A program made the position numbers and the translations under genes. 64,000 nt of DNA from the NCBI RefSeq assembly GCF_039654945.1, contig NW_027361924.1:4154001-4218000 (forward strand), given 5' to 3'. Origin of the DNA: Dendrobates tinctorius (lineage: Eukaryota). Under the pieces are notes generated by a model. It was not told the DNA's origin. It ran no database searches and worked only from the letters and a program-made list of their open reading frames with translations. Below, one piece after another: positions 9,510 to 64,000 of the stretch (positions are counted from its first letter, which is position 1; every line of letters begins with the position of its first letter).

Positions 9510-9624
9510 GGAGAGGAGGAGTCAATGATCCAATGGTGGTAATTAACCAACCAACTGTCAATAAGTATTGATATCTTAGACTACCATCATTGGGTTCATG
9601 TTATTGGAACTATTGATTCTTCTT

Positions 9625-9833
9625 GAGTGCAGCTCTGGGGTATAATACAGGATGTAACTCAGGATCAGTAATGTATGTACACAGTGACTGCACCAGCAGA
9701 ATAGTGAGTGCAGCTCTGGGGTATAATACAGGATGTAACTCAGGATCAGTAATGTAATGCATGTACACAGTGACTGCACCAGCAGAATAGTGAGTGCAGC
9801 TCTGGAGTACAATACAGGATGTAACTCAGGATC
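9625..9833 (-). repeat. 86-bp satellite, about 2.5 units
   Basis: GAGTGCAGCTCTGGRGTATAATACAGGATGTAACTCAGGATCAGTAATG... repeats; reverse complement of the 12.6-kb array. Confidence 0.92.
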
Positions 9834-10856
9834 CCTTTCACAGTACTGCAGTGACCGCTGTCAGACAATGATGGGATTATCTCCAGTCGTTATGACAGTT
9901 GTCACCCGTCTCCTACTTCAACACACCGCAGGAGATCTGTTTACAAATTGTCAAACATGTGATACACTGTAACATCAGTGCAGATTATCACTTTTCTTAT
10001 AACCTCTGAGCACTTGTACAAAAATGATTGTAATGCAGGAAGAAAATGTGTGAATGTATGTGCAGCTTATAGTAAGGAGCAGAAGGTAGAGGACGAGGCT
10101 GCGGCCACCAAATCTTCCAGCATCAGCCGTTTACAAGAAGTGTGAACATGTGGAGACGTCCTGGTAGATGGCAGCGCTCCACTACGTGACTCTGCAGGCG
10201 CACACTGACACTACACAGACACCCCACACGGTCACCCCGTGGATATAAGCATGTGACTGTTAAGTGGAATCATCCTGTTACACATACAAAGGAACAAAGT
10301 GTATTCTGCGCCGGTCACATCCTCCTGCACGACAGAGAGGCAGAAACGTTCTTCTACAGAGCGGAAGTCGGTAGTAGCGCCTTTTCCTGTCCTGACCGCT
10401 GCTCCTACAGATGGAGGGGAGCAAAGGTCTGAAACATCATCGATGCTAATCAGTCTACAACTCCGGCACATTAAGGTTCACAGGCTGCAGGTGAAAAGAC
10501 ATTAAAGGAGGTCCTACCATTACTACGACCACAAGAACAGAGAGCATGTGCGACCGCTGCACCTTCCCTTAGAATGCTCACTACTGCTCCATTCGCACAG
10601 GGCACCATAATACCCCCAAGTGATCATACATTCGTTTTCTGTGCACAGGTAAATGATATTGATTATAGGACAACCCCTTTGATAATGCAGAACAAAATGG
10701 GGGTGGGAATGACATGACACGACTACCATAATACAGGGACAACCCAGCAGATCCCGTCTGAAAACTCCGTTGTCATGGATACAAAAAACAACAATTGAGA
10801 GTGTTTTATGAGGGGATATCCAAGAAGTATCATTTCTCCTTGCGGAGAATAACATG

Positions 10857-10925
10857 CTAAGCATGTCGAGGTGAGGAGACTTAAAGCCGCAATGCTCCTC
10901 TGGGAAATATGCTAATTATGCAAAT
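10857..10925 (-). promoter_or_regulatory. snRNA-type promoter module inside retrozyme A (octamer x2, SPH/ZNF143 site, PSE-like box)
   Basis: Minus strand: ATTTGCAT-A-ATTAGCAT-ATTTCCCAGAGGAGCATTGCGG...CTCACCTCGACATGCTTAG. Confidence 0.6.
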
Positions 10926-11056
10926 TGTCTCTTCAGAGAAGAAGAGGACTAGAACTCTAGTGCCACCTATTGGAGGTAGCAATCCTAAAAGTCAATGTTG
11001 ACCCTTTAACGAGCCTAGTTACATGACTTAGGATAAAAGCCAAGCCAGAATCTCCA

Positions 11057-11101
11057 TTTGCAGACACTGTGTTTCGGGGTACTGCCCCTCATCAGTGCAA
11101 A
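11057..11101 (-). ncRNA. Type I hammerhead ribozyme
   Basis: Minus strand reads UUUGCA-CUGAUGA-GGGG CAGUA CCCC-GAAAC ACAGU GUC-UGCAAA. The core and stems I and II are intact and stem III is short (ACAC A GUGU). Predicted cleavage is after GUC, between 11063 and 11062. Stem I extends with bulges to about 11039/11123. Confidence 0.92.
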
Positions 11102-12554
11102 GTGGGAGAAGATCTGGTTTGGCTGTGAGAGAGGCGTCTGACCGATATCCAAGAAGTATCATTTCTCCTTGCAGAGAATAACATGCTATGAGGGGATGTC
11201 AGGCAACAAATCCCTAAAAACGACTTGTCGTTATCTTAAAGAACATGTATCCTTTCCATAGTATAGATGAAAAACGTTTGATCGTTGGGGGTCCGTCTGC
11301 GGAGTCCACCACCGATTCCAAGACTGGGGGGTCCAAATTTGGTTGTACGGCTAGTGACAGTAGAGCTGTGGTCACTCATTACTTCATCTTTGGACCTTGG
11401 TTCTCATGATCGGTGGTTGTCCCAAAGAAGTGATGCAACTAAACATCAGCGAAAGAAAAACAAGTGCAATATTTGCAAATAATCAATGTGACCACAACAA
11501 ATGTCCCTGATACAGGCAGGAAAGAAAACACTGCAGCGCTAACCATGCAGGACCCCAGAGGTCTAGGGGACAGATTACTCGTCATTCCTCGCAGATTGTT
11601 TTTCTCCAAGTTCTACCTCCAGCAAAGTTTACAGTAATCATTCAGCAAAAAGTGGTGAAAGCAACTGAGCGACACTAATGTGAATATAAAGTGTCAGCAG
11701 CCGGAGACCAGAGACAAACCGGTCCGGACAACCCTATTGTACGCCTGACAGCGGCGGCTACAGAAAGGCAGCAGGTGGAAAGAAGAAGCATTGTTGTGAC
11801 CGGACCGAAGACGCTTTCTGAGAACAGAACCCTTAGAACAATTACAATTAAAAATAAGTAACCCCCCCCCCCATGTGGAAGCGAATTATCAGAGCAGGAG
11901 AGAACCGGCCCTCGCTGAACATAGCAGATTCGCACTGATAAGTGAAATACCAGGTTAATGTATGATCGGTCACCTTGGTCAAAGGGCCGGAAAAATATTG
12001 AGCAAACTGGAGACAAAGGAGGAGGGGAAAATTTTCACTATATACAGAAGTGGAATATTAAAAGAAAAGGATAAATACAGACAGAAAACTAATGTCTTCT
12101 GTGTGAGCAACATAAGGATTACTATGGCGTCGGCCACCAATGACACACAGGAAAAGCAGAGAGGAAGGAAACAATTCACAGCAAATCTCCACCCAAAGCG
12201 AAAAAATTACATCTGCTCATGAGCGGATCAGCGGAGGAAGGACACACGGGACGGAAATCAGGCGGAAGAAATCTGACTCGGATTTTGCAATAAATCTGTA
12301 AAAAAGACAATACCGTAGGAATTACTCATACACAGACACAATAACGAGCCGGTGACACAGCTGGATCTCAAAACACCACAGTTTAGAGGGGGAGACGGCC
12401 GTCAGCCCCCAGAGACAGAGAGCAGATTGACAAGACGTCATACACTGGAAGAGGAGGAAGCTGCCCACAAATATCAGCAGCCCACCTACCATCTACACAT
12501 AGTAAAAAGTACAAAGCGAGGAGCACTGTAAATATCTTATATAGACCTCTATTG

Positions 12555-13987
12555 ATCCGGAGTTACCTCCTTTATTAAACCCCAGAGCTGTACTCACTAT
12601 TCTGCTGGTGCAGTCACTGTGTACATACATTACATTACTGATCCTGAGTTACAGCCTGTATTATACTCCAGAGCTGCACTCACTATTCTGCTGGTGCAGT
12701 CACTGTGTACATACATTACATTACTGATCCTGAGTAACATCCTGTATTATACTCCAGAGCTGCACTCACTATTCTGCTGGTGCAGTCACTGTGTACATAC
12801 ATTACATTACTGATCCTGAGTTACCTCCTGTATTATACTCCAGAGCTGCACTCACTATTCTGCTGGTGCAGTCACTGTGTACATACATTACATTACTGAT
12901 CCTGAGTTACAGCCTGTATTATACCCCAGAGCTGCACTCACTATTCTGCTGGTGCAGTCACTGTGTACATAGATTACATTACTGATGCTGAGTAACATCC
13001 TGTATTATACTCCAGAGCTGCACTCACTATTCTGCTGGTGCAGTCTCTGTACATACCTTACATTACTGATCCTGAGTTACCTCCTGTATTATACTCCAGA
13101 GCTGCACTCACTATTCTGCTGGTGCAGTCACTGTGTACATACATTACATTACTGATCCTGAGTAACATCCTGTATTATACTCCAGAGCTGCACTCACTAT
13201 TCTGCTGGTGCAGTCACTGTGTACATACATTACATTACTGATCCTGAGTTACCTCCTGTATTATACTCCAGAGCTGCACTCACTATTCTGCTGGTGCAGT
13301 CACTGTGTACATACATTACATTACTGATCCTGAGTTACAGCCTGTATTATACCCCAGAGCTGCACTCACTATTCTGCTGGTGCAGTCACTGTGTACATAG
13401 ATTACATTACTGATGCTGAGTAACATCCTGTATTATACTCCAGAGCTGCACTCACTATTCTGCTGGTGCAGTCTCTGTACATACCTTACATTACTGATCC
13501 TGAGTTACCTCCTGTATTATACTCCAGAGCTGCACTCACTATTCTGCTGGTGCAGTCACTGTGTACATACATTACATTACTGATCCTGAGTAACATCCTG
13601 TATTATACTCCAGAGCTGCACTCACTATTCTGCTGGTGCAGTCACTGTGTACATACATTACATTACTGATCCTGAGTTACCTCCTGTATTATACTCCAGA
13701 GCTGCACTCACTATTCTGCTGGTGCAGTCACTGTGTACATACATTACATTACTGATCCTGAGTTACAGCCTGTATTATACCCCAGAGCTGCACTCACTAT
13801 TCTGCTGGTGCAGTCACTGTGTACATAGATTACATTACTGATGCTGAGTAACATCCTGTATTATACTCCAGAGCTGCACTCACTATTCTGCTGGTGCAGT
13901 CTCTGTACATACCTTACATTACTGATCCTGAGTTACCTCCTGTATTATACCCCAGAGCTGCACTCACTATTCTGCTGGTGTAGTCAC
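12555..13987 (+). repeat. 86-bp satellite array with a 428-bp (5-monomer) higher-order repeat
   Basis: Unit CTGCACTCACTATTCTGCTGGTGCAGTCACTGTGTACATACATTACATTACTGATCCTGAGTTACMTCCTGTATTATACTCCAGAG; identical variant blocks recur at 12791, 13219 and 13647. Confidence 0.96.
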
Positions 13988-17112: not shown

Positions 17113-17960
17113 GTAGTCACTTTGTACATACATTACTGATCCTGACTTACCGCCTGTATTATACCCCAGAGCTGCACTCACTATTCTGCTAGTGCAGTCA
17201 CTGTGTACATACATTACTGATCCGGAGTTACCTCCTGTATTATACTCCAGAGCTGCACTCACTATTCTGCTGGTGCAGTCACTGTGTACATACATTATAT
17301 TACTGATCCTGAGTTACCTCCTGTATTATACCCCAGAGCTGCACTCACTATTCTGCTGGTGCAGTCACTGTGTACATACATTACATTACTGATCCTGAGT
17401 TACCTCCTGTATTATACCCCAGAGCTGCACTCACTATTCTGCTGGTGCAGTCACTGTGTACATTACATTACTGATCCTGAGTTACATCATGCATTATACT
17501 CCAGAGCTGCACTCACTATTCTGCTGGTGCAGTCACTGTGTACATACATTACATTACTGATCCTGAGTTACATCATACATTATACTCAAGAGCTGCACTC
17601 ACTATTCTGCTGGTGCAGTCACTGTGTACATACATTACTGATCCCGAGTTACCTCCTGTATTATACTCCAGAGCTGCACTCACCATTCTGCTGGTGCAGT
17701 CACTGTGTACATACATTACATTACTGATCCCGAGTTACCTCCTGTATTAAACCCAGAGCTGCACTCACTATTCTGCTGGTGCAGTCACTGTGTACATACA
17801 TTACTGATCCTGAGTTACATCCTGTATTATACTCCAGAGCTGCACTCACTATTCTGCTGGTGCAGTCACTGTGTACTTACATTACATTACTGATCCTGAG
17901 TTACATCCTGTATTATACTCCAGAGCTGCACTCACTGTGTACCTACATTACCATATTACT
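17113..17960 (+). repeat. 86-bp satellite array (continuation after the hAT insertion; 81/86-bp units)
   Basis: Resumes in register after the TSD. Confidence 0.95.
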
Positions 17961-18726: not shown

Positions 18727-18944
18727 ACACCAGCAGAATAGTGAGTGCAGCTCTGGAGTATAATACAGGATGTAACTCAGGATCAGTAATGTAATGTATG
18801 TACACAGTGACTGCACCAGCAGAATAGTGAGTGCAGCTATGGGGTATAATACAGGATGTAACTCAGGATCAGTAATGTAATGTATGTACACAGTGACTGC
18901 ACCAGCAGAATAGTGAGTGCAGCTCTGGAGTATAATACAGGATG
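18727..18944 (-). repeat. 86-bp satellite, opposite orientation, 5' of the Tx1 insertion
   Basis: CACCAGCAGAATAGTGAGTGCAGCTC... units ending in ATACAGGATG. Confidence 0.93.
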
Positions 18945-26841: not shown

Positions 26842-27147
26842 ATACAGGATGTAACTCAGGACCAGTAATGTAATGTATGTACACAGTGACTGCACCAGCA
26901 GAATAGTGAGTGCAGCTCTGGAGTATAATACAGGAGGTAACTCAGGATTAGTAATGTAATGTATGTACACAGTGACTGCACCAGCAGAATAGTGAGTGCA
27001 GCTCTGGGGTATAATACAGGATGTAACTCAGGATCAGTAATGTAATGTATGTACACAGTGACTGCACCAGCAGAATAGTGAGTGCAGCTCTAGGGTATAA
27101 TACAAGATGTAACTCAGGATCAGTAATGTATGTACACAGTAACTGCA
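26842..27147 (-). repeat. 86-bp satellite, 3' of the Tx1 insertion
   Basis: Resumes in register after the TSD. Confidence 0.93.
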
Positions 27148-36195: not shown

Positions 36196-37994
36196 ATAAA
36201 TTCATGTATAGCAGCACACAGATTGGTTTCTATGGGTTGCTCATCCACTTTTCCTTTCAATGGTTTTGATAATGTGACTGATACTGTTTGTTGTCAGGGG
36301 AACTGTGTTTGCCCTGCGTTGTCACGGTAACCACATTTCCTGGGATATGGGTTGTCAGAGATACTGCTTTGGTTCTGAAACACAGGTTGTCAGGGTTACT
36401 GCCTCTGTCCAGGGAGCTAGGTTGTCAGGATTATAACCTCTGTCCTGAGGCATAGGTTGTCAGGGTAGCTGCCTTGGTCCTGGGAAACAGGTTGTCAAAA
36501 TTACTGCCTCAGTCCTTCGACAAAGGTTGTCAGGGTTACAGCACCATCCTGCGACTAAGGTTGTCAGGGTTACCACCCCTGTCCTGTGACTAAGGTTGTC
36601 AGGGTTACCGCCCAATTATGTGACTAAGGCTGTCAGTGTTACGGCCCCGTTCCTGTGAGTAAGGTTGTCAGGGTTACCGCCCCTGTCCTGTGAGTAAGGT
36701 TGTCAGGGTTACCGCCCCGTCCTGTGACTAAGGTTGTCAGGGTTACCGCCCAATTATGTGACTAAGGCTGTTAGGGTTACGGCTCCATTCCTGTGAGTAA
36801 GGTTGTCAGGGTTACCACCCCTTCCTGTGACTAAGGTTGTCAGAGTTACCTCCTCTGTCCTGTGACTAAGGTTGTCAGGGTTACCGCCTCTGTCCTGTGA
36901 CTAAGGTTGTCAGGGTTACCGCCCAATTATGTGACTAAGGCTGTCAGGGTTACGGCTCCGTTCCTGTGAGTAAGGTTGTCAGGGTTACCACCCCTTCCTG
37001 TGACTAAGGTTGTCAGAGTTACCTCCTCTGTCCTGTGACTAAGGTTGTCAGAGTTACCGCCTCTGTCCTGTGACTAAGGTTGTCAGAGTTACCTCCTCTG
37101 TCCTGTGACTAAGGTTGTCAGAGTTACCGCCTCTGTCCTGTGACTAAGGTTGTCAGAGTTACCGCCTCTGTCCTGTGACTAAGGTTGTCAGGGTTACCGC
37201 CTCTGCCCTGTGACTAAGGTTGTCAGAGTTACCGCCTCTGTCCTGTGACTAAGGTTGTCAGAGTTACCGCCTCTGTCCTGTGACTAAGGTTGTCAGAGTT
37301 ACCGCCTCTGTCCTGTGACTAAGGTTGTCAGGGTTACCGCCTCTGTCCTGTGACTAAGGTTGTCAGGGTTACCGCCTCTGTCCTGTGACTAAGGTTGTCA
37401 GAGTTACCGCCTCTGTCCTGTGACTAAGGTTGTCAGAGTTACCGCCTCTGTCCTGTGACTAAGGTTGTCAGAGTTACCGCCTCTGTCCTGTGACTAAGGT
37501 TGTCAGAGTTACCGCCTCTGTCCTGTGACTAAGGTTGTCAGAGTTACCGCCTCTGTCCTGTGACTAAGGTTGTCAGAGTTACCGCCTCTGTCCTGTGACT
37601 AAGGTTGTCAGGGTTACCGCCTCTGTCCTGTGACTAAGGTTGTCAGAGTTACCGCCTCTGTCCTGTGACTAAGGTTGTCAGAGTTACCGCCTCTGTCCTG
37701 TGACTAAGGTTGTCAGAGTTACCGCCTCTGTCCTGTGACTAAGGTTGTCAGGGTTACCGCCTCTGCCCTGTGACTAAGGTTGTCAGGGTTACCGCCTCTG
37801 CCCTGTGACTAAGGTTGTCAGGGTTACCGCCCCTGTCCTGTGACTAAGGTTGTCAGGGTTACCACCCCTGTCCTGTGACTAAGGTTGTCAGGGTTACCAC
37901 CCCTGTCCTGTGACTAAGGTTCCCCGGGAAGGAACAACCACGGAAAGGGCAGTCTCCAATGAAGGAAACCACCTATGCCAAAACATGGTATCCA

Positions 37995-38038
37995 TCCACA
38001 GACAGCTGTTTCGGGGTATTGCCCCTCATCAGTGTGGA
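37995..38038 (-). ncRNA. Type I hammerhead ribozyme (intact core)
   Basis: Minus strand UCCACA-CUGAUGA-GGGG CAAUA CCCC-GAAACAGCUGUC-UGUGGA; palindromic stem III ACAGCUGU; predicted cleavage between 38001 and 38000. Confidence 0.92.
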
Positions 38039-38332
38039 GTAGGAAACTGGCCAGTAGGAGCAATGCCTAGTAAAAGACTGTGAAAATGAGGATGAGTGAC
38101 CTCATGGAGATCAACATCCAACACTGCGGAGACACCATCACATGTTTCTCAACGCAGTGATTCTAGAGCAATGCCCCCATCCCTTATGGGAAATATGCAA
38201 AACATGCAAAACAGAAGCCGCGGAGACACCATCACATGTTTCTCAACGCAAGCAATGACCAGCGAGGTCATTCATTCATCCTCATCTTCACAGTCTTTTA
38301 CTAGGCATTGCTCCTACCAGCCAGTTTCCTAC

Positions 38333-38376
38333 TCCACATTGATGAGGGGCAATACCCCGAAACAGCTGTCTGTGGA
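38333..38376 (+). ncRNA. Type I hammerhead ribozyme, C3U core variant
   Basis: UCCACA-UUGAUGA-GGGG CAAUA CCCC-GAAACAGCUGUC-UGUGGA; predicted cleavage after 38370. Confidence 0.85.
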
Positions 38377-39912
38377 TTGTTACCATGTTTTGGCATAGGT
38401 GGTTTCCTTCATTGGAGACTGCCCTTCCCGTCGTTGTACCTCTTGGGGAAAGACCTGGCTGGTCATTGCTTGCGTTGAGAAACATGTGATGGTGTCTCCG
38501 CGGCTTCTGTGACTTAGGTTGTCAGGGTTACCGCCCTGGTCCTGTGACTAAGGTTGTCAGGGTTACCGCCCTGGTCCTGTGACTAAGGTTGTCAGGGTTA
38601 CCGCCCTGGTCCTGTGACTAAGGTTGTCAGGGTTACCGCCCTGGTCCTGTGACTAAGGTTGTCAGGGTTACCAACCTGGTCCTGTGACTAAGGTTGTCAG
38701 GGTTACCAACCTGGTCCTGTGACTAAGGTTGTCAGGGTTACCGCCCTGGTCCTGTGACTAAGGTTGTCAGGATTACCGCCCAGTCCTGTGACTAAGGTTG
38801 TTAGGGTTACAGCCCCAGTCCTGTGACTAAGGTTGTCAGGGTTACCGCCCCAGTCCTGTGACTAAGGTTGTCAGGGTTACCGCCACTTCCTGTGACTAAG
38901 GTTGTTAGGGTTACAGCCCCATCCTGTGACTAAGGTTGTTAGGGTTACAGCCCCAGTCCTGTGACTAAGGTTGTTAGGGTTACAGCCCCAGTCCTGTGAC
39001 TAAGGTTGTTAGGGTTACAGCCCCATCCTGTGACTAAGGTTGTCAGGATTACCGCCCCATCCTGTGACTAAGGTTGTCAGGATTACCGCCCCATCCTGTG
39101 ACTAAGGTTGTTAGGGTTACAGCCCCAGTCCTGTGACTAAGGTTGTCAGGGTTACCGCCCCAGTCCTGTGACTAAGGTTGTTAGGGTTACAGCCCCATCC
39201 TGTGACTAAGGTTGTCAGGGTTACCGCCACTTCCTGTGACTAAGGTTGTTAGGGTTACAGCCCCAGTCCTGTGACTAAGGTTGTTAGGGTTACAGCCCCA
39301 GTCCTGTGACTAAGGTTGTCAGGGTTACCGCCCCAGTCCTGTGACTAAGGTTGTCAGGGTTACCGCCACTTCCTGTGACTAAGGTTGTCAGGGTTACAGC
39401 CCCATCCTGTGACTAAGGTTGTCAGGGTTACTTCCTCTGTGCTGAGCCAGGTTTTCGGGTTCTGGGACGGGGTGTGTGGCACAGTTGGCGGTCTCTGACC
39501 CCACCACACTGTAGCATATGGTATTTGGCTCCATCCTCTGAGGATCTAGAAAACAGCGATAAAAAAAGGACAAAAAAAATGTAGAATACAAAAAAGAAAA
39601 ATTCCTTTCCACCAAGAGAAAAACCCCAAACATATCTGGTATCAGTGGGAGCGTAAAGTCCGATCTGTGGAAATATAACACCGTCATCTGTGCGAAGGAG
39701 ACCTGTGGCCCCGACGCTCCACGGCCCCCGCAATAAGGACAGAAGAAGCCACCGGAAGACGGTGAAAACATCGGCTGCACAAAGCTCAGGAGATAGGCGC
39801 CGGGTTTTTTAATTTTTTTACAAAGTTCAAAATTGTTTAAGACGCAAAATATAAAACCGTCTCACGCCGCCGTCCTGAGAATCCGATCACCAGCCACCGC
39901 ACCAGACACAGT

Positions 39913-51243: not shown

Positions 51244-54200
51244 TCAAATCTTGTATAAAATGCTGGGGATGTAATCAAATCTGAGCACAGGAAGCAGCTG
51301 CGTCCCCGATTCTCTTAGATAATGCATTTTGAGCAGTTCCGAGAGGTATTCTACGATCTTACTGTCCTCGTGGGAGAGGCCGAGGAGCTGCTGCAGGAAG
51401 GCGACGCGGCGCTGGGTTATCGACTCCTCGCTCTCCTTCTCCCGGATGGGCAGGTGGACGTGGTGGCAAAAGGTGAAGAGGAAGGCCTTAGCGCTGAGCT
51501 GGGTCAGCATGCTCTGCACGTGCATGTAGTAAGTGCTGCCCTTCCTAATCTGTGTGCGGTGGTCTGCCACCCTCTGGAGGAGCGTCCCTCTGTACACAGG
51601 GCACCGCAGTGTCTTGTTGTCCGCATCCAATATGCTGGCGTACCGGCTGTATCGGCTCAGGGTGTGCAGAGTGTTGGATCCGGAAGGAGAGACCCCCCTA
51701 CGAGATGAGAAGAAAAAAAAAAGTTATTAAAAAGTAACAAAGTTCTGAAACTTTTCAACTGCATCTTACCATTTAAGAATTCTGCTTGCTATCAGTGAAT
51801 GGAAACTCACTTATATAGTCACCGATTCATGATGGACATGACCAGGAAAACGTTTGCATTCCCTGACAGCTAGCAGAAGTCGGCATAACCCCATTTTTTA
51901 TTTTTTTTTTATGTTAGGCTCCCAACAGCTATCACAGTCCGGGTGGAGCAATAAGTCAGAAATCTAGCTCCTATGTCAGGGTTCCACTCTGTCCTCCTAT
52001 ACTTTACACTGCAGCTCTGCTCGCTCAGATTTTATACCCACAAACCCAGTGGGACTCCATTATGTGGAGAGGGGCTTCAGAGGATTAGAAAGCAGCGAGG
52101 ACCATTCTCACATTGTCAGTGATGTAGAACAACCGACTCCCTGAAGAGGGGGAAGAAACCAAACAGGAGGTCGAGGACACGGAGTAAATTGTGTAATGGC
52201 TTCCGTTACTGCCTCCTAGAAACTGATAATGCAGATATTATCTAATATGGAGAAGACTTGATTCATAATAGTCGGATCCCGAGGATAAAGTGGGAAGCCA
52301 CCTTTGGGGAAAAAATATTTTTTACCGGTACTTAAAAGCATGAAATTTGAGCTAAATTTTTAGCTCAAATTTCATGCTTTTAAGTACCGGTAAAAAATTG
52401 AAAAAGTAATTTTACTTTTGCAATTGGATTTCATTTAAAATCTCTATAGCCTCCGTATTTTTACTGCCTATGAATGAGTTAACTGAGCACGTCCTGATAA
52501 GAGTTTTCAGCATGGGAAATATAAATGTACAGGGAAACATCAGCGTGAAAAAGCAAAAGGTATAATGAAAGCCAATTGCAAAAATGATATTTAATCCCAA
52601 ATACATGCATTTAAAAATGATAGTTCCTGTAAGTGGAAAATCCTTTTAAGGATAACTTCACAAGGGATGAAAATCCACAGATAATCCGCACATATAACAA
52701 GAGATTAATTCACTGCACATTTCTCCTCTATATAGGAAGAGATGAAATCCACAGTGAATATTTGCACCAGAGATTCAGAGCGCAGGGCAATTACCGCAGC
52801 CGGAGGATGAGATTTCCTCCACACAGCTAGTACTCAGTACCACACAAGTATGGGGACGTTTTTCAGGGTCTTTACCTCTGAAGTCCAATCAGTTTCCACT
52901 TCTGGAAATCCATGACGTGCAGGGGGGAGGTCACCCACGTCTTGATGGGTTTGGCTACGTGTCCATTATTAGGGACAAACACGGACAACGCCGTCACAAG
53001 TTTTTTCACAAAGGCTTCCTCTTCGCCCAACACAACGAGGGTCCTCCCGCTGAGCAGAGAGTAAATGGCGGGGTGAGAAAAGGGGTACTGCCTGATGAAC
53101 ATCAGAGCATTTTGGCCGGCTTTCCTTTTTTGGCGTTCGGTGATGGTGGCAACGGGGGGAGGGGAAGGTGTCCTATCGGAGCAGGTGGAAGCGCCGCTTC
53201 TGTAGCTGGTGGAGTCCTCGTCCACAGTCATTTTTCCAGCGTCCCTGCTACTCAATAGGTAGTTGGACTCAGGAGGAGCGGGGCTTTCCCCGGATGGGTC
53301 GTCCACTTGCTCCACGTAGAATTTCACCGAACCGAACATATGGCTGATGTGCCTGCCAGCCTGAGGCGGCATGCTGACTACGACGCCATCGCTTGGCACA
53401 AAGTCTCCGGCTAACTCGTCAAGAATGGGAGACTCAGTCCGTATACAACAGGCCGGGTCCACAGTCAGATCGACCTCGTTGGCTTGATCATTGTCCTTGA
53501 AATTGGCACAGTCCTCACCCTCGGCAGAGGTCTCCTCTTCGTTAATGGCTATTTGGTAAGAGGCTCGAAAATCTTCAGGGATCACAGTTTCGGATGTACA
53601 AGTACTAAGGACTTCAATGCTGTCCTCGCTGATGGTCCTCCGGCTGCCGGATTTCCGTCTGGACTGCGGGCTTGGATGAAGCCTCAGGCACGGCTGACTC
53701 TCCGAATGGACGAGGAGCGTAGACTTCTCAGTCTGTAAAACCTCGATGCTGTCTCCACTGCTCACACTCCCTTTGGTCTCTGCCTCGAAACCCTCTGTGT
53801 TGCTGGTCGCCTCATCCTGGTCATCGTCGAACGCCTCCTGCTCAATTTTAATCCGCACAGACTCCACGCTGGACTTGTAGGACTCCACACTGACCGAGGG
53901 CTTCATGTCTTCTGCCGCTTTAGCAGCACTCGGCTGGTTCAAATATTGCCTAGCGATCGGTTTAAGAGCCAAGGTGGAGACGTCCTCAAAGAGAAAGTTT
54001 GCAATGGCTTGCTGCCCTAGGAGGGTTCTGTCCAGGTGGCTCATGACTAAGTAGCTGACGTCGCCCCGATAGCGCTTCTCGATGGCCGTCAGCAGGTCCA
54101 TCGTCTGGGTGAAAAAGTAGACGTCCACCAGCTCCTCCAAGGTCTTCAGCTTCTTATCGAAACACTTGGAAGACTTGGCTTTGATGAATTTGGGGGTGTA

Positions 54201-55070
54201 GGAGGAGCGAGGGGTGTAGACCTCCGGGTCATCGTCGTCACCTTCGTGGTCGGAGGTGGTGACTGGGTCCGGCACGTATGGCTGGTAGTCCTCCCCCTTT
54301 AGGTGTCGGTATGGGTAGGACTGGATCTGTCGCAGGAGGTCCTGGTGCTCGATCATGGACTTCTCCACGTTGCCCAGCTCGTTGGCCTTCTCGATGGCCT
54401 GGGTGGTGTAGAAACCCTGGTGGTCCGTCTTCTCCTGCTCTTCCATCTCGTCCAGGAGGACGCTCCGGGTGTAGTCCAGGTCCTTTAGCTTCTTCTCCAG
54501 CTCGTTGGCGAACGCTTTGCGGTTTCCAGTCTTGAGACATTCGGACGCCTTGGAGAAGTCGCCCGAGAGCTGCAGGAACTGCTCCATGATCTTGTCCTCG
54601 TCGGTGGAGATGTAGGCCATGCAGAAGGGGCGCACGAAGCCTCGCGCTTCCAGGTCGTACAGCGTCAGGTGGTGCACGTAGGCGAACGCCCCTTCCTTGG
54701 AGTCGCCCAGGACCACCTTGGAGTCCTCCACGAAGTTCAGCTTGGGGTACGAAGACCCTGGGGGGTGACCCACGAACGAGGCCTGGTAGTCCACCGACAT
54801 GATGCGCAGGGAGAAGTAGTTGAGGTCGAAGGCACCGCGGACGCGGGGGTCGTCGGGGACGGTGAGAAGAGGCTGTGGCCCCACCTGCTCCGAGAACTCC
54901 GAGATCAGGATGAAGTCCCTGATGAATTTGGCCCCCGAAAGCCGGGACCAGGGGCTGCTCTCTGGAAACAGCGGCACTGAGTACTCCTCTGGGAGCCCCG
55001 GGGAGTCCTGCAGGGGGCAGTCATACTCCTCATCGCGGGTAAACGCCACCACATCCGGAGAGCCGATCAT
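51244..55070 (-). CDS. SMCR8: SMCR8, DENN-fold subunit of the C9orf72-SMCR8-WDR41 complex; 882 aa, 2 coding exons
   Basis: Exon 1 55070-52876 (MIGSPDVVAFT..., EFSEQVGPQP, LYDLEARGFVRP, ...KLIGLQR; donor AG|GTAAAG) and exon 2 51697-51244 (GVSPSG...SRYSRYASILDADNKTLRCP...SILYKI*). Phase-2 junction; 2649 nt total. Confidence 0.97.
52317..52398. repeat. Perfect 82-bp palindrome (40-bp arms, 2-nt spacer) in the SMCR8 intron
   Basis: ATTTTTTACCGGTACTTAAAAGCATGAAATTTGAGCTAAA-TT-TTTAGCTCAAATTTCATGCTTTTAAGTACCGGTAAAAAAT. Confidence 0.92.
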
Positions 55071-59788: not shown

Positions 59789-61275
59789 ATGCCTAACTCT
59801 AAGGCTGAGCGTGGCCGTCCGCCGGCCCCCACGGGCTCTTTAGTCCAGTTCTTCACATGCTCCTCTTGCAATCGCAAACTTCCCTCAGGTCAGCCTACTC
59901 CCCTCTGCCTGGACTGCAGCAATCCCATTCAGCAAGACCCCGTCCAGGAGCCATCTATTGCGTCACGTGGAAGCGATCCCCCATTCCTGGTTGGGCCTCG
60001 TCTCTTTCACAATCTGTGGCAGACCTCACCAGGGTGTCTCAGTCCCTAGTAGCCGTCCTTGATAAGTTACCCCTGGACGCTTCTGCAGGGTCCAGCAGGT
60101 CACATGAAGCTCCATCTGAGCCAGCCAGCAGAAGCCGCAAAAGGCCCAGACAGGATCTCCGGCCGGGATCCCCTCCTGGCCTCACATCCCCAAATAGTCC
60201 TTCCCAGCAGTCGCCCTCCCGTGCCTCCTCACCCGAGCCAGGTGAAGCGTTCTCGGATTTGTCATCCGAAGAGATCTTAGAGCTGGATTCGGACCAGGAC
60301 GCGGACATGAAGGTTACGGTACAGAACCTCATTGCTGCGATTAACCAGACCTTCGAAATCTCAGACTCCCCTGCGAAATCCTCAGAACAGGAGGTTTCAT
60401 TCAGACGGCCAGAAACACCTTCCAGGGTCTTCGCCTCCCACTCTGAGTTTGGCAAGATCCTTACCAGGGAAAGAGAAAATCCAACCAGGCGCTTTCAAAG
60501 AGGGAGGCGCCTCAGCGTGCTGTACCCGTTTGCCAAAGAGCTCACCGACAACTGGTCTGCTTCCCCCTCGGTAGACGCACCCGTGTCCAGACTTTCTAAC
60601 AACACGGGCCTCCCGATTTCAGGTGTGGCGTCACTAAAGGATTCTAATGATAGAATTATAGAATCTTTAGCAAAGTCAACATTCGAAGCGGCTTCAGCAG
60701 TGCTAAGCCCAGCCTTTGCTTCATCTTGGGTAGCGAAGGCCATAGCCACTTGGGCAGAGGATCTCCGCAAGGGCATCGTAGATAAAGCCCAACCAGAGCA
60801 ATTGGCCGAACTGGCCAACCAGATCTCTCGTGCAGGGGATTATCTGCTCTCTGCCTCCTTGGATGTCGCGTCTTGCGCAGTTCAGGCGTCAAGCAACGTG
60901 GTAGCAATCCGACGTACAATTTGTCTCAAGGCTTGGCAGGCGGATTTGTCTTCAAAAAAGTCCCTTACCAATCTGCCTTTTCAGGGAGCGCGTCTCTTCG
61001 GATCCTAGCTGAACCAGATTATTAAGGACGCCACTGGGGGCACGAGTTCCCTCCTCCCTCAGTCCAAGCCTCGTAGACCTCTGCTAAGACGTCAGTTTCG
61101 GCCCTTTCGGACTTTCCGCCTCTTCAATGCGGCAGACAACTTCTCTAACCAACAGAGACCGCAGGCACGCCAGGATAGAAAAAAGGTGTCCTTCAGACCC
61201 ACTCCCTCCTGGCGATCTCACAACTCCCAGGGCAGATCCTCCAGATCCAGATCTGGACGGTCCACATCTGCATGA
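59789..61275 (+). pseudogene. DIRS1 ORF1 (gag-like), disrupted
   Basis: N-terminal CSSC...CLDC; SVDAPVSRLS, LKDSNDR, KAWQADLSSKKSLTNLPFQGARLFG; frameshift near 59.98 kb and TAG at 61006-61008. Confidence 0.8.
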
Positions 61276-61907
61276 CTATCAACGAACTCCCGAGGGTCCT
61301 TACCAATTGGGAGGTCAACTCCTTTTCTTCAGAGACGTCTGGCTTGCCTCAGTAGAGTACCCTTGGGTCAGGGAAGTTGTATCATCAGGATACAAGATAG
61401 AGTTCGTTTCTCGTCCCCGGGATCGTTTCTTCGAGTCCCGACCTCCAAAAGATCCTGCCTTAGTTCCGGGGTTCTTTGCGTCCATCGCCTCTCTCCTCAC
61501 TTCTGGAGTGATTGTGCCCGTTCCCGAATCAGAACGTTTCACAGGGTTTTATTCAAACCTGTTCGTGGTGCCGAAAAAAGGCGGTACAGTTCGCCCCATC
61601 TTGGACCTCAAGTTACTCAACAAGAGAGTCCGACTGCATCATTTCCGAATGGAGTCTCTTCGGTCGGTAATCGCTTCCATGGAAACACAGGAGTTCATGT
61701 GTTCAATAGACATTCAAGATGCATATCTACATGTTCCCATATTCTCCGGCCATCAGAAATTCCTGCGTTTCACCATTCGCCAGGAACACTACCAGTTTGC
61801 ACTGCCGTTCGGTCTCGCCACCGCACCCAGAGTATTTAAAAAGATCATGGTGGCGTTGATGGCCTTGTTGAGAATCAGAGGTCTCGTTCTTTTTCCGTAC
61901 CTCGACG
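61127..61907 (+). pseudogene. DIRS1 reverse transcriptase, interrupted at YLDD
   Basis: GYKIEF, GFYSNLFVVPKKGGTVRPILDLK, FRMESL, IDIQDAYLHVPI, LPFGLATAPRVF, PYLD then an insertion. Confidence 0.9.
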
Positions 61908-64000
61908 CACTGGCGTAGCGCTGGGGGGGGCGGTCCGCCCCAGGCGGCATGTGTGTGGGGGCGGCGCGGCAGCAGCAATTCCACCCTGCAGTGCAGTGCA
62001 GCGGTGGGCAGGGAGCGATGCGATCACGGCAGCTCCGCTGCCTGCAAGAGTGAATAGCAGGAGCGGAGCGGCAAGGGTCCGTCCTGCTTCCTGCCCGGAG
62101 GCCGCGCTTCCTGTTTCACACAGAGGAGCGCCGATGAATGACGTCATCATTCAGCGGCCGCTGCTGTGTGAGGGAGGAAGCGCTGGCGATGCTGCGGACA
62201 GGTGAGAGGAGAGAGGTGGTGTCTTGTGTGTATGTATGTGTGTATGTATGTATGTCTGTCTCTGTGTGTGTGTATGTCTGTGTGTATGATGGAGCAGGCA
62301 GTGATGGGAGTGATGGTCTAGAAGGCAGTGATGGGGTGAAGGAGCAGACAATGATGGGGGTGATGGAGAAGGCAGTGATGGGGTGATGGAGCAGGCAGTG
62401 ATGGGAGTGATGGAGCAGGCAGTGATGGGGGTGATGGAGCAGGCAGTGATGGGGGTGATGGAGCAGGCAGTGATGGGGTGATGGAGCAGGCAGTGATGGG
62501 GTGATGGAGCAGACAATGATGGGGTGATGGAGCAGGCAGTGATGGGGTGATGGAGCAGGCAGTGATGGGGTGATGGAGCAGACAATGATGGGGTGATGGA
62601 GCAGACAATGATGGGGTGATGGAGCAGGCAGTGATGGGGTGATGGAGCAGACAATGATGGGGTGATGGAGCAGACAATGATGGGGGTGATGGAGAAGGCA
62701 GTGATGGGGTGATGGAGCAGGCAGTGATGGGAGTGATGGAGCAGGCAGTGATGGGGTGATGGAGCAGGCAGTGATGGAGCAGACAATGATGGGGTGATGG
62801 AGCAGACAATGATGGGGTGATGGAGCAGGCAGTGATGGGGTGATGGAGCAGACAATGATGGGGTGATGGAGCAGACAATGATGGGGGTGATGGAGAAGGC
62901 AGTGATGGGGTGATGGAGCAGGCAGTGATGGGAGTGATGGAGCAGGCAGTGATGGGGGTGATGGAGCAGGCAGTGATGGGGTGATGGAGCAGGCAGTGAT
63001 GGGGTGATGGAGCAGACAATGATGGGGTGATGGAGCAGGCAGTGATGGGGTGATGGAGCAGGCAGTGATGGGGTGATGGAGCAGACAATGATGGGGTGAT
63101 GGAGCAGACAATGATGGGGTGATGGAGCAGGCAGTGATGGGGTGATGGAGCAGACAATGATGGGGTGATGGAGCAGGCAGTGATGGGGTGATAGAGCAGA
63201 CAATGATGGGGTGATGGAGAAGGCAGTGATGGGGTGATGGAGCAGACAATGATGGGGTGATGGAGCAGGCAGTTATGGGGTGATGGAGCAGGCAGTGATG
63301 GGGTGATGGAGCAGACAATGATGGGGTGATGGAGCAGGCAGTGATGGGGTGATGGAGCAGGCAGTGATGGGGTGATAGAGCAGACAATGATGGGGTGATG
63401 GAGAAGACAATGATGGGGTGATGGAGCAGGCAGTGAGGGGAGTGATGGGGGTGATGGAGCAGGCAATGATGGGGTGATGGAGCAGACAATTATGGGAGTG
63501 ATGGAGCAGGCAGTGATGGGGTGATGGAGCAGACAATGATGGGAGTGATGGGGGTGATGGAGCAGGCAATGATGGGGGTGATGGAGCAGGCAGTGATGGG
63601 GTGATGGAGAAGGCAGTGATGGGGTGATGGAGAAGGCAGTGATGGGGTGATGGAGAAGGCAATGATGGGAGTGATGGGGTGATGGAGCAGGCAATGATGG
63701 GGGTGATGGAGAAGGCAGTGATGGGGTGATGGAGAAGGCAGTGATGGGGAGAAGACAATGATGGGGTGATGGGGAGAAGGCAGTGATGGGGTGATAATGA
63801 TGGCAATGATGGGGGTGATGGAGCAGGCAATGATGGGGGTGATGGAGCAGGCAATGATGGGGGTGATGGAGCAGGCAATGATGGGAGTGATGGGGTGATG
63901 GAGCAGGCAATGATGGGAGTGATGGGGAGAAGGCAGTGATGGGGTGATGGAGAAGGCAGTGATGGGGAGAAGACAATGATGGGGTGATGGTCGAGAGGGC
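61908..64000. mobile_element. Probable hAT-type non-autonomous element with a long internal minisatellite; runs off the window
   Basis: Starts CACTGGCGTAGCGCTGGGGGGG (CAGTGGCGTA-like TIR) exactly where the RT frame breaks; the far end is not visible. Confidence 0.6.
62287..64000. repeat. 23-27-bp minisatellite (GATGGAGCAGGCAGTGATGGGGT / GATGGAGCAGACAATGATGGGGT)
   Basis: More than 60 variant units; source of the spurious HHCLLHHP ORFs. Confidence 0.96.

What the first reader, a model, noticed from the sequence alone, without database searches (positions are those of the whole stretch)
10807..11197. Hammerhead-ribozyme retrozyme (family A): 329-bp monomer, terminal redundancy and TSD point to a circular or multimeric RNA template
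Seen: an ORF-less insert with a complete minus-strand type I hammerhead (CUGAUGA, GGGG-CAGUA-CCCC, GAAAC, GUC). It is about 1.14 monomers long (the 45-bp repeat recurs at period 329), is circularly permuted relative to the cleavage site, and is flanked by an 11-bp duplication TATGAGGGGAT. Established: newt satellite 2 (~330 bp) and animal non-LTR retrozymes are hammerhead-bearing repeats processed to monomeric or circular RNA and thought to be mobilised by Penelope-like RTs. Inference: a dispersed frog retrozyme copied by an RT that went slightly more than once around a circular RNA.
Basis: partly seen in the sequence, partly recalled or inferred. Interest (0 to 1): 0.9.

Follow-up and report, generated by a model that had tools for sequence, protein, structure and literature searches.

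The report
Young frog hammerhead retrozyme insertion
A 369-base, gene-less mobile repeat carrying a self-cutting (hammerhead) RNA motif jumped into this frog's DNA recently; it is a clean example of a kind already described in amphibians, and it does not show whether the copied RNA was a circle.

Summary
At 10818-11186 lies a 369-bp, ORF-less insert between exact 11-bp duplications (TATGAGGGGAT). It is 1.12 units of a 329-bp repeat: a 45-nt repeat sits at both ends, 44/45 identical. The minus strand carries a complete type I hammerhead core, with the cut site at 11063|11062. A contig from a related organism (run X6) joins 10806 directly to 11187. That is an empty site with one copy of the duplication, so this is a real and fairly recent insertion. 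The family is very abundant in at least three organisms, and other copies read straight through this copy's ends.

Rfam does not call the hammerhead. The Hammerhead_1 model gives nothing, and the best hit is a sub-threshold local match to RAGATH-1-hammerhead. My own descriptor finds 2 hits in the window and 0 in 300 shuffles. Three helix I pairs covary with the window's second family.

Hammerhead-bearing non-LTR retrozymes tied to Penelope-like elements are already published for axolotl and frogs. This scan has about 130 similar notes in this genome. The template was longer than one unit. A circle and a linear multimer with internal RT initiation, as shown for a Penelope-like RT in vitro, fit equally well. 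This is a new member of a known kind, of low to moderate interest.

The parts
10807..10817 (.). Left copy of the 11-bp target-site duplication TATGAGGGGAT. Its last 3 nt (GAT) are also the first 3 nt of the terminal repeat, a microhomology at the junction where reverse transcription would have been primed.
   Evidence: The empty site in run X6 keeps one copy.
10818..11186 (-). The insert: 369 bp, or 1.12 units of a 329-nt non-coding repeat, 45% GC. The element (RNA) sense is the minus strand. In that sense the 3' end lies at 10818 and the 5' end at 11186.
   Evidence: Family-wide depth rises and falls exactly at these limits (table 2).
11187..11197 (.). Right copy of the 11-bp target-site duplication. 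Its first 2 nt (TA) overlap the end of the terminal repeat.
10815..10859 (-). Terminal repeat, left copy. In RNA sense this is the 3' end of the full unit. It contains a UUCUCC-GCAA-GGAGAA hairpin.
   Evidence: fold
11144..11188 (-). Terminal repeat, right copy. In RNA sense this is the start of the insert and the last ~40 nt of the preceding unit. It differs from the left copy by one G>A change at a CpG (10844 versus 11173).
11051..11109 (-). Type I hammerhead.
- Helix I distal: 11109-11105 with 11055-51.
- Internal loop: CAC opposite U.
- Helix I proximal: 11101-11096 with 11062-57.
- CUGAUGA: 11095-89.
- Helix II: 11088-76.
- GAAA: 11075-72.
- Helix III: 3 bp with a CAG loop, within the near-palindrome ACACAGUGU (11072-64).
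- C17: 11063, with the cut between 11063 and 11062.
   Evidence: (local alignment to a hammerhead model)
10917..11109 (-). A core of about 190 nt, from the hammerhead to the octamer. Many other contigs share it at about 85% identity and then run on into unrelated sequence. The remaining ~136 nt of the unit is family-specific.
   Evidence: pieces 3-7 and 26-30; loose ends pile up at 10917-10919; the depth profile
10918..10925 (+). Octamer ATGCAAAT, preceded by the 7/8 variant ATGCTAAT at 10909-16. It sits exactly at the edge of the shared core. A similar stretch, GGGAAATATGCAAAA, is the only non-hammerhead match to the window's second family.
   Evidence: Function not tested.

Best explanation
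This is one recent, dead-end copy of a very abundant frog non-LTR retrozyme family. Such a family is a non-coding 329-nt unit with a type I hammerhead that depends on a retrotransposon's enzymes to move.

The likely sequence of events is inferred, not shown:
1. An endonuclease made a staggered cut at TATGAGGGGAT.
2. The plus-strand 3' end ...GGGGAT primed reverse transcription on the minus-sense RNA, at an internal AUC (3-nt microhomology).
3. The RT copied 369 nt, 1.12 units.
4. The cDNA was joined to the other side of the cut through a 2-nt microhomology, leaving an 11-bp duplication.

The template was therefore longer than one unit. I put a linear multimeric transcript with internal initiation at about 0.5 and a self-cleaved, ligated circle at about 0.35. 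The enzyme is most likely a Penelope-like RT/GIY-YIG protein. With a single hammerhead, this copy cannot release a unit RNA by itself.
For: Shown:
- Exact 11-bp TSD and a 45-nt terminal redundancy at period 329.
- Empty site: X6 contig record 25 maps to 10400-10806 and runs straight on at 11187-11600. Its flanks are about 4% diverged (table 8).
- Abundance: depth jumps from about 3-9 in the flanks to 1e5-1e6 exactly inside 10810-11186 in three organisms. In X1, 14,626 contigs were laid, 1,420 of them at 99% identity or more.
- Periodicity: 'goes back' joints such as 11185->10896 and 11188->10876 show other copies running through this copy's ends (tables 5 and 5c).
- Hammerhead: the core is complete and non-random, with 0 hits in 300 shuffles. 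Three of six proximal helix I pairs are changed on both sides relative to family B, while the core and helix II are invariant.
- Fold: the circular unit folds at -104.8 kcal/mol, z = -4.8, closed by a long helix I.
- No ORF, no tRNA-like head, no poly(A).

From the literature:
- Amphibian retrozymes of 331 and 353 nt, with a weak helix III and TSDs above 4 bp (PMC7229834).
- Frog families related to PLE pLTRs (10.64898/2026.07.22.740005).
- A PLE RT initiates internally on unprocessed RNA, and PLE insertions form partial tandems with 30-40-bp tails (PMC11167929, PMC8557442).
Against: - Rfam does not recognise the ribozyme at any useful threshold.
- The active fold (-15.8 kcal/mol) is predicted to be less stable than an alternative (-20.4), and cofolding does not give the double hammerhead.
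- Eight of nine Xenopus dimers failed to cleave in vitro in the 2026 preprint, so activity cannot be assumed.
- No run is on record as RNA, so expression is not shown.
- No Penelope-like RT was identified in this window. The RTs found belong to a LINE at 18.9-26.8 kb and an unclassified fragment at 61.1-61.9 kb.
- The start points of other copies could not be tabulated.
Confidence: 0.8

Rival explanations
1. One reading: the template was a covalently closed 329-nt circular RNA, made by hammerhead cleavage and ligation. The RT started at an arbitrary point and went 1.12 times round.
For: - The ends are unrelated to the cut site, and the insert is longer than one unit.
- The two terminal repeats differ only by one CpG transition, which fits two passes over the same template.
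- The unit folds as a stable circle, z = -4.8.
- CircRNAs of this size make up about half of the monomeric retrozyme RNA in axolotl (PMC7229834).
Against: - Every one of these features is also produced by a linear multimeric transcript.
- No RNA evidence for this family was obtained here.
Confidence: 0.35
2. It is a SINE-like passenger of a LINE (a CR1/L2/Tx1-type RT) rather than of a Penelope-like element.
For: - An 11-bp TSD is also typical of LINE-mediated insertion.
- A Tx1-type LINE lies 8 kb away (scan note s1-362343).
- In the wider superfamily, the flanks at the 10917 boundary are A/T-rich (table 7).
Against: - There is no poly(A) or microsatellite tail at the RNA-sense 3' end.
- There is no tRNA-like head.
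- Type I hammerheads with a minimal helix III and longer-than-unit partial tandems are hallmarks of PLEs and retrozymes (PMC4209133, PMC8557442).
- The window's second family is inserted as a head-to-head pair, the PLE pattern (s1-362232).
Confidence: 0.08
3. It is a solo pseudo-LTR of a 5'-truncated autonomous Penelope-like element, not a stand-alone non-autonomous unit.
For: - Frog retrozyme consensuses match PLE termini (10.64898/2026.07.22.740005).
- The 40-bp overhang is the size of the PLE 'tail' (PMC8557442, PMC11167929).
- An unchecked scan note places a 331-bp unit next to a Penelope RT (s1-364489).
Against: - The insert repeats itself at period 329 with no coding sequence between the repeats.
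- Other copies read through the same junction, so the unit closes on itself without an ORF.
Confidence: 0.07
4. It is a DNA-level event: a piece of a tandem satellite, or of extrachromosomal circular DNA derived from one, captured at a double-strand break.
For: - Length of 1.12 units with arbitrary ends.
- The family is abundant enough to be a satellite.
Against: A clean 11-bp duplication and precise ends, with only 2-3 nt of microhomology and no filler, are what staggered endonuclease cuts with TPRT give. Break repair does not typically leave these.
Confidence: 0.04

Closest known systems
Amphibian non-LTR retrozymes and salamander/newt satellite 2 (Epstein & Gall 1987; Cervera & de la Pena 2020, PMC7229834)
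   Same: - A non-coding unit of about 330 nt (axolotl families are 331 and 353 nt).
- A type I hammerhead with a very short helix III, expected to act as a dimer.
- GC below 50%, very high copy number, TSDs longer than 4 bp.
- A predicted strongly self-paired circular fold.
   Different: - This is a frog family. Sequence homology to the salamander units could not be tested because no reference sequence was at hand.
- This copy is a dispersed 1.12-mer, not an array.
- Self-cleavage and circular RNA are not shown.
Xenopus non-LTR retrozyme families (Li, Clavereau & Pollet 2026, bioRxiv 10.64898/2026.07.22.740005)
   Same: - Frog hammerhead repeats averaging about 316 bp in Amphibia.
- They occur as monomers, dimers and multimers, with monomers dispersed along the chromosomes.
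- They are proposed to be non-autonomous derivatives of PLE pLTRs.
   Different: - That work explains tandems by local amplification after insertion. Here the extra-unit length lies inside the TSD, so it arose at insertion.
- Whether family A is one of their 57 Xenopus families is unknown.
Penelope-like element insertions (partial tandems, pLTR, 30-40-bp tail; PMC8557442, PMC11167929, PMC4209133)
   Same: - A head-to-tail partial tandem with a 5'-truncated upstream copy.
- A minimal type I hammerhead.
- A 40-bp overhang in the size range of the PLE tail.
- Insert ends that are not at the ribozyme cut site, as expected from internal RT initiation.
   Different: - No RT/GIY-YIG ORF, and a unit of only 329 nt.
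- The junction shows 3-nt microhomology with the target, whereas the anole PLE initiated without homology.
- The target here is not notably AT-rich.
Plant LTR retrozymes (Cervera et al. 2016, PMC4918200)
   Same: Non-autonomous, hammerhead-processed retroelements whose RNA accumulates as circles.
   Different: The plant elements have type III hammerheads inside ~350-bp LTRs, a PBS and PPT, 4-bp TSDs, and Gypsy-type mobilisation. None of these applies here.

Membership tests
Non-LTR (metazoan) retrozyme | Type I hammerhead with the complete catalytic core (CUGANGA, GAAA, UH cut site) and helices I and II | tested here: met
   Read directly from the sequence. The descriptor gives 2 hits against 0 in 300 shuffles. 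A local alignment to a hammerhead model recovers helix I, CUGAUGAG, CGAAAC and GUC. There are 3 compensatory helix I pairs against family B.
Non-LTR (metazoan) retrozyme | Short non-coding unit (about 150-450 bp), GC below 50%, no LTR | tested here: met
   The unit is 329 nt with 45% GC. No ORF above 45 aa lies inside it. PBS and PPT were not searched for.
Non-LTR (metazoan) retrozyme | Units in head-to-tail tandem, with a hammerhead in each unit | tested here: inconclusive
   This copy has 1.12 units and one hammerhead. Contigs from other copies read through the unit junction (tables 5 and 5c), but array lengths could not be measured.
Non-LTR (metazoan) retrozyme | Insertion with target-site duplications longer than 4 bp | tested here: met
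   An exact 11-bp TSD, and an empty site in run X6 (record 25).
Non-LTR (metazoan) retrozyme | Transcribed, self-cleaved and accumulated as linear and circular monomer RNA | not testable with these tools
   No holder run is on record as RNA. The 'RNA?' runs are guesses and are stored as contigs only. The predicted active fold is not the MFE.
Non-LTR (metazoan) retrozyme | Predicted stable, highly self-paired circular RNA | tested here: met
   Circular MFE is -104.8 kcal/mol against -79.8 +/- 5.2 for shuffles, z = -4.8.
Rfam Hammerhead_1 (RF00163) and other Rfam hammerhead models | Covariance-model score at or above the gathering threshold | tested here: not met
   No hit at gathering score and none at E<=10 on 601 nt. 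On 86 nt the only hit is RAGATH-1-hammerhead at 17.4 bits against a gathering score of 56.3. The minimal helix III is the likely reason.
Autonomous Penelope-like element (pLTR of a coding copy) | Adjacent RT plus GIY-YIG ORF within the same insertion | tested here: not met
   The TSDs bound 369 bp with no ORF. The ORFs of 200 aa or more in the window lie elsewhere; of the six scanned against Pfam, two were not TE proteins (Folliculin-like, LAP2alpha-like) and the RT-related ones were a LINE (exo/endonuclease, RT, zf-RVT) and an unclassified RT fragment.
Newt/salamander satellite 2 | Sequence homology to the ~330-bp salamander unit | not tested
   No reference sequence was available from a tool. 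The resemblance in size, hammerhead type and an octamer motif is by description only.
tRNA-derived SINE | tRNA-like head and a LINE-matching or A-rich 3' tail | tested here: not met
   ARAGORN finds nothing. The RNA-sense 3' end is ...CUUCUUGGAU with no tail.

The most novel reading that the evidence does not exclude
Family A is mobilised from circular RNA by rolling-circle reverse transcription, primed at microhomologies anywhere on the circle. If so, a genome-wide table of young, TSD-flanked copies would show start points spread round the unit. Together with empty sites in sister taxa, that would be the first direct genomic evidence for circRNA-templated retrotransposition in a vertebrate.
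Probability: 0.3. Interest if true: 0.6.

Novelty: new member of a known kind. Interest (0 to 1): 0.3.

Why it matters
The life cycle of animal retrozymes is still largely inferred. Published models disagree on how tandems arise: at insertion, by rolling-circle or multimer copying, or later, by unequal crossover. This locus gives one clean data point. The extra 40 bp lies inside an exact TSD, and a related organism has the empty site, so the longer-than-unit structure was made in the insertion event itself. Many such dated insertions, with their start points tabulated, could decide between circular and linear templates. On its own, this copy is an ordinary member of a described class.

Tried and rejected
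- Rfam scans. The whole window at gathering score, 601 nt at E<=10 and 86 nt at E<=10 give no usable hammerhead call. Rfam cannot be cited as support.
- Metagenome scan with the core plus helix II pattern. The single hit, L001, is a GC-rich contig that looks bacterial or phage-like. It shares only the 26-nt core and helix II, so it is not a relative and gave no extra frog copies.
- Self-BLAST of the insert against the window. There is no second family A copy. The only matches are the hammerhead cores of family B and a 24-nt octamer-containing stretch.
- Cofolding two hammerhead segments to test the dimer idea. The MFE keeps an alternative intramolecular pairing (CACUG with CAGUG) and does not form the intermolecular helix III. 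This is neither support nor refutation.
- RNA evidence. No run is on record as RNA, all the runs laid are contigs, and they cannot show ends, strand or circles.
- Tabulating the start points of other copies.
- Chance was considered and rejected, given the shuffles and the empty site.
- A post-insertion tandem duplication was considered and rejected, because the redundancy lies inside the TSD.
Full report
**What is there**

- A 45-nt direct repeat lies at 10815-10859 and 11144-11188. It is 44/45 identical with spacing 329.
- An exact 11-bp duplication, TATGAGGGGAT, lies at 10807-10817 and 11187-11197.
- The sequence between the duplications (10818-11186) is 369 bp, or 1.12 units of 329.
- The last GAT of the left duplication is also the first GAT of the repeat. 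The TA that ends the right repeat is also the start of the right duplication. Both junctions therefore carry 2-3 nt of microhomology.
- The only difference between the two repeat copies is G (10844) versus A (11173) at a CpG.
- No ORF above 45 aa lies inside the insert. ARAGORN finds no tRNA-like sequence. The RNA-sense 3' end has no poly(A) or microsatellite tail.

**The hammerhead**

The minus strand reads UUUGCA-CUGAUGA-GGGG CAGUA CCCC-GAAA-C ACAGU G-UC | UGCAAA.
- CUGAUGA is at 11095-89, helix II at 11088-76, GAAA at 11075-72, and C17 at 11063.
- Helix I has 6 proximal pairs, then an asymmetric internal loop (CAC opposite U), then 5 more pairs. In the full unit it continues into a closing stem of about 25 bp.
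- Helix III is only A-U, C-G, A-U around a CAG loop. It sits within the near-palindrome ACACAGUGU. This is the weak helix III typical of amphibian and PLE hammerheads, which are reported to cleave as dimers (PMC7229834, PMC7761336).

Rfam does not support the call.
- There is nothing at gathering score in the whole window.
- There is nothing at E<=10 in 601 nt.
- In 86 nt there is only a 17.4-bit local match to RAGATH-1-hammerhead, whose gathering score is 56.3. That alignment does recover helix I, CUGAUGAG, CGAAAC and GUC in the right order.

Other tests do support it.
- My own type I descriptor requires helix I of at least 5 bp, CUGANGA, helix II of at least 4 bp, GAAA, a short helix III, and UH. 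It finds two hits in the window, this one and 38038-37995, and none in 300 dinucleotide-preserving shuffles.
- I aligned this hammerhead with the two arms of the second family at 37920-38510. The core and helix II are invariant. Three of the six proximal helix I pairs are changed on both sides: G-C to A-U, and U-A to C-G twice. All cells remain paired. With three sequences this is modest but real covariation.
- Among thousands of family contigs, the frequent variants listed inside the hammerhead's core and helices II-III fall at the free N of CUGANGA (11091) and at the centre of the helix III loop (11068); one more (11055) lies in the distal part of helix I. Only the best-supported rows of that table were shown (table 3).

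Folding is less favourable.
- The active monomer fold scores -15.8 kcal/mol. An alternative in which CACUG pairs with CAGUG scores -20.4.
- Cofolding two copies does not produce the double hammerhead.
- Eight of nine Xenopus retrozyme dimers did not cleave in vitro in the 2026 preprint. Activity is therefore plausible but unproven.

**It is a real and fairly recent insertion**

I laid contigs from four runs on 10400-11600.
- Contig record 25 of run X6 (a different, coded organism B; 1,923 nt) maps to 10400-10806 and continues without a break at 11187-11600. This is the empty site with a single copy of the duplication. Its flanks differ from the window by about 36 substitutions in about 820 bp, plus small indels, so it comes from a related lineage rather than the same assembly.
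- The source organism's own contigs (X1 records 1 and 8) cross both junctions of the filled site without differences.
- The flanks are single-copy, with depth of about 3 in X1 and about 9 in X6.

**It belongs to a very abundant family**

- Summed depth jumps to 1e5-1e6 exactly between 10810 and about 11186 in organisms A, B and C. In X1, 14,626 contigs were laid, 1,420 of them at 99% identity or more. The tool warns that these figures are not copy numbers, but the contrast with the flanks is four to five orders of magnitude.
- 'Goes back' joints show other copies running from the spacer through the terminal repeat into the sequence that follows the left repeat here. Examples are 11185->10896 and 11188->10876, with the intervening letters matching a diverged 10860-10875. 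The 329-nt unit therefore closes on itself elsewhere, and this copy's ends are not fixed family ends.
- A core of about 190 nt (10917-11109) is shared at about 85% identity with many contigs that then continue into unrelated sequence. The evidence is pieces 3-7 and 26-30, and about 600 loose ends piled at 10917-10919. The core runs from the 5' edge of the hammerhead to an octamer, ATGCAAAT, at 10918-25. The other ~136 nt of the unit is family-specific.
- Unchecked notes elsewhere in this scan describe a dispersed unit of about 220 bp with a hammerhead and an octamer (s1-382801, s1-362226). That agrees with this core.

**The RNA**

The 329-nt unit folded as a circle gives -104.8 kcal/mol, against -79.8 +/- 5.2 for shuffles (z = -4.8). 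It is 63% paired and closed by the extended helix I. The antisense strand is also more stable than its shuffles (z = -3.4). This matches the description of retrozyme circRNAs as strongly self-paired (PMC7761336). Expression could not be tested. No holder run is on record as RNA, and all the runs are stored as contigs.

**How it most likely arose**

Three things are shown: an insertion with a staggered-cut signature, a copy longer than one unit made in that single event, and ends unrelated to the ribozyme cut.

The mechanism is inferred to be target-primed reverse transcription. The plus-strand 3' end ...GGGGAT paired with AUC inside ...GGAUAUCGG... of the minus-sense RNA. The RT copied 369 nt. 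The cDNA was then joined through a TA microhomology. The 5' end falls in the loop of an ACAUGC-UUA-GCAUGU hairpin, a possible stalling point, though that is speculation.

The template was longer than one unit, and there are two candidates.
- The retrozyme model has a hammerhead-cleaved, ligated circle copied more than once round (PMC7229834; Figure 2 of PMC7761336).
- A purified Penelope-like RT from anole initiates internally on unprocessed RNA. It does not need hammerhead cleavage. It explains the partial tandems and the 30-40-bp 'tail' of PLE insertions (PMC11167929; PMC8557442).

The 40-bp overhang here is in the tail's size range. With one copy, that cannot be told apart from arbitrary 5' truncation. 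The single CpG difference between the repeats fits either template. I therefore give the linear multimer about 0.5, the circle about 0.35, and other routes the remainder.

**Which enzyme**

Several features point to a Penelope-like element rather than a LINE.
- The hammerhead has a minimal helix III.
- The insertion is a partial tandem.
- There is no tail.
- The window's second family is inserted as a head-to-head pair (s1-362232).
- Frog retrozymes are published as related to PLE pLTRs.

No PLE RT was identified in this window. The RTs present are a LINE at 18.9-26.8 kb and an unclassified RVT_1 fragment at 61.1-61.9 kb. The enzyme assignment therefore rests on the literature.

**Comparison with what is known, and novelty**

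- Hammerhead repeats of about 330 nt have been known in newts since 1987. They were redefined as non-LTR retrozymes in axolotl, with families of 331 and 353 nt (PMC7229834).
- A 2026 preprint reports them in all seven amphibians sampled. It names 57 Xenopus families and finds dispersed monomers as well as arrays.
- This scan holds about 131 notes on hammerhead retrozymes in this same genome. They include followed-up insertions judged clean but ordinary.

The present locus is thus a new member of a known kind. Its one useful point is that the longer-than-unit structure lies inside the TSD and is dated by an empty site. This shows that partial multimers can arise at insertion rather than by later unequal crossover, the route the preprint favours for arrays.

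**Limits**

- I could not fetch other family A copies. The metagenome scan returned only an unrelated contig that looks bacterial or phage-like, with the same core and helix II.
- I could not compare with salamander satellite 2 or with Repbase PLEs.
- I could not test RNA.

Noticed in passing
window 37920-38510: A second hammerhead family is inserted in a 35-bp minisatellite as a head-to-head pair. The left arm (38038-37995, minus strand) has an intact core. The right arm has CUGAUGA mutated to UUGAUGA (38341). Its helix III loop, AGCU, makes ACAGCUGU a perfect palindrome. The scan has already noted and followed this up (s1-362232, s1-362419).
   Followed up: partly
window 10909-10925, and 38187-38210 in family B: An octamer ATGCAAAT, preceded by ATGCTAAT, sits exactly at the edge of the ~190-nt core shared across the superfamily. 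A similar stretch, GGGAAATATGCAAAA, is the only non-hammerhead similarity between families A and B. It may be an snRNA-type enhancer, as I recall being described for newt satellite 2. That is from memory and was not verified here.
   Followed up: partly
window 10933-10973: The depth of family-like contigs peaks here, at about twice the rest of the core. The stretch holds GTGCCACCTATTGGAGG, which other scan notes call CTCF-like. No motif test was run.
   Followed up: no
L001:1540-1610 (metagenome contig Ga0315284_10168994): A GC-rich contig that looks bacterial or phage-like carries GGUC|UCUG...CAGA-CUGAUGA-GGGGCAGUACCCC-GAAACC. This is a hammerhead with helix I closed by a loop and helix III open. 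Its core plus helix II is letter-for-letter the same 26 nt as in the frog element. It is probably convergence within a short constrained motif.
   Followed up: partly
window 9624-9833, 12553-13987, 17115-17936, 18728-18944, 26842-27134: Blocks of an 86-bp satellite in both orientations surround the locus, with a higher-order period of 428 at 12.5-14 kb. A LINE carrying exo/endonuclease, RT and zf-RVT domains (about 18.9-26.8 kb) splits one block (scan note s1-362343).
   Followed up: no
window 59857-61918: Two adjacent plus-strand ORFs. One is 383 aa with a LAP2alpha-like match (E = 3e-9). The other is 263 aa with an RVT_1 match (E = 1e-9). They run into a 23-bp minisatellite. The clade of the RT, LINE or Penelope-like, was not determined.
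   Followed up: no
window 52872-55070 (minus strand): A 732-aa uninterrupted ORF with a Folliculin-domain match (E = 1.7e-8). It could be a large coding exon or a retrocopy of a host gene.
   Followed up: no
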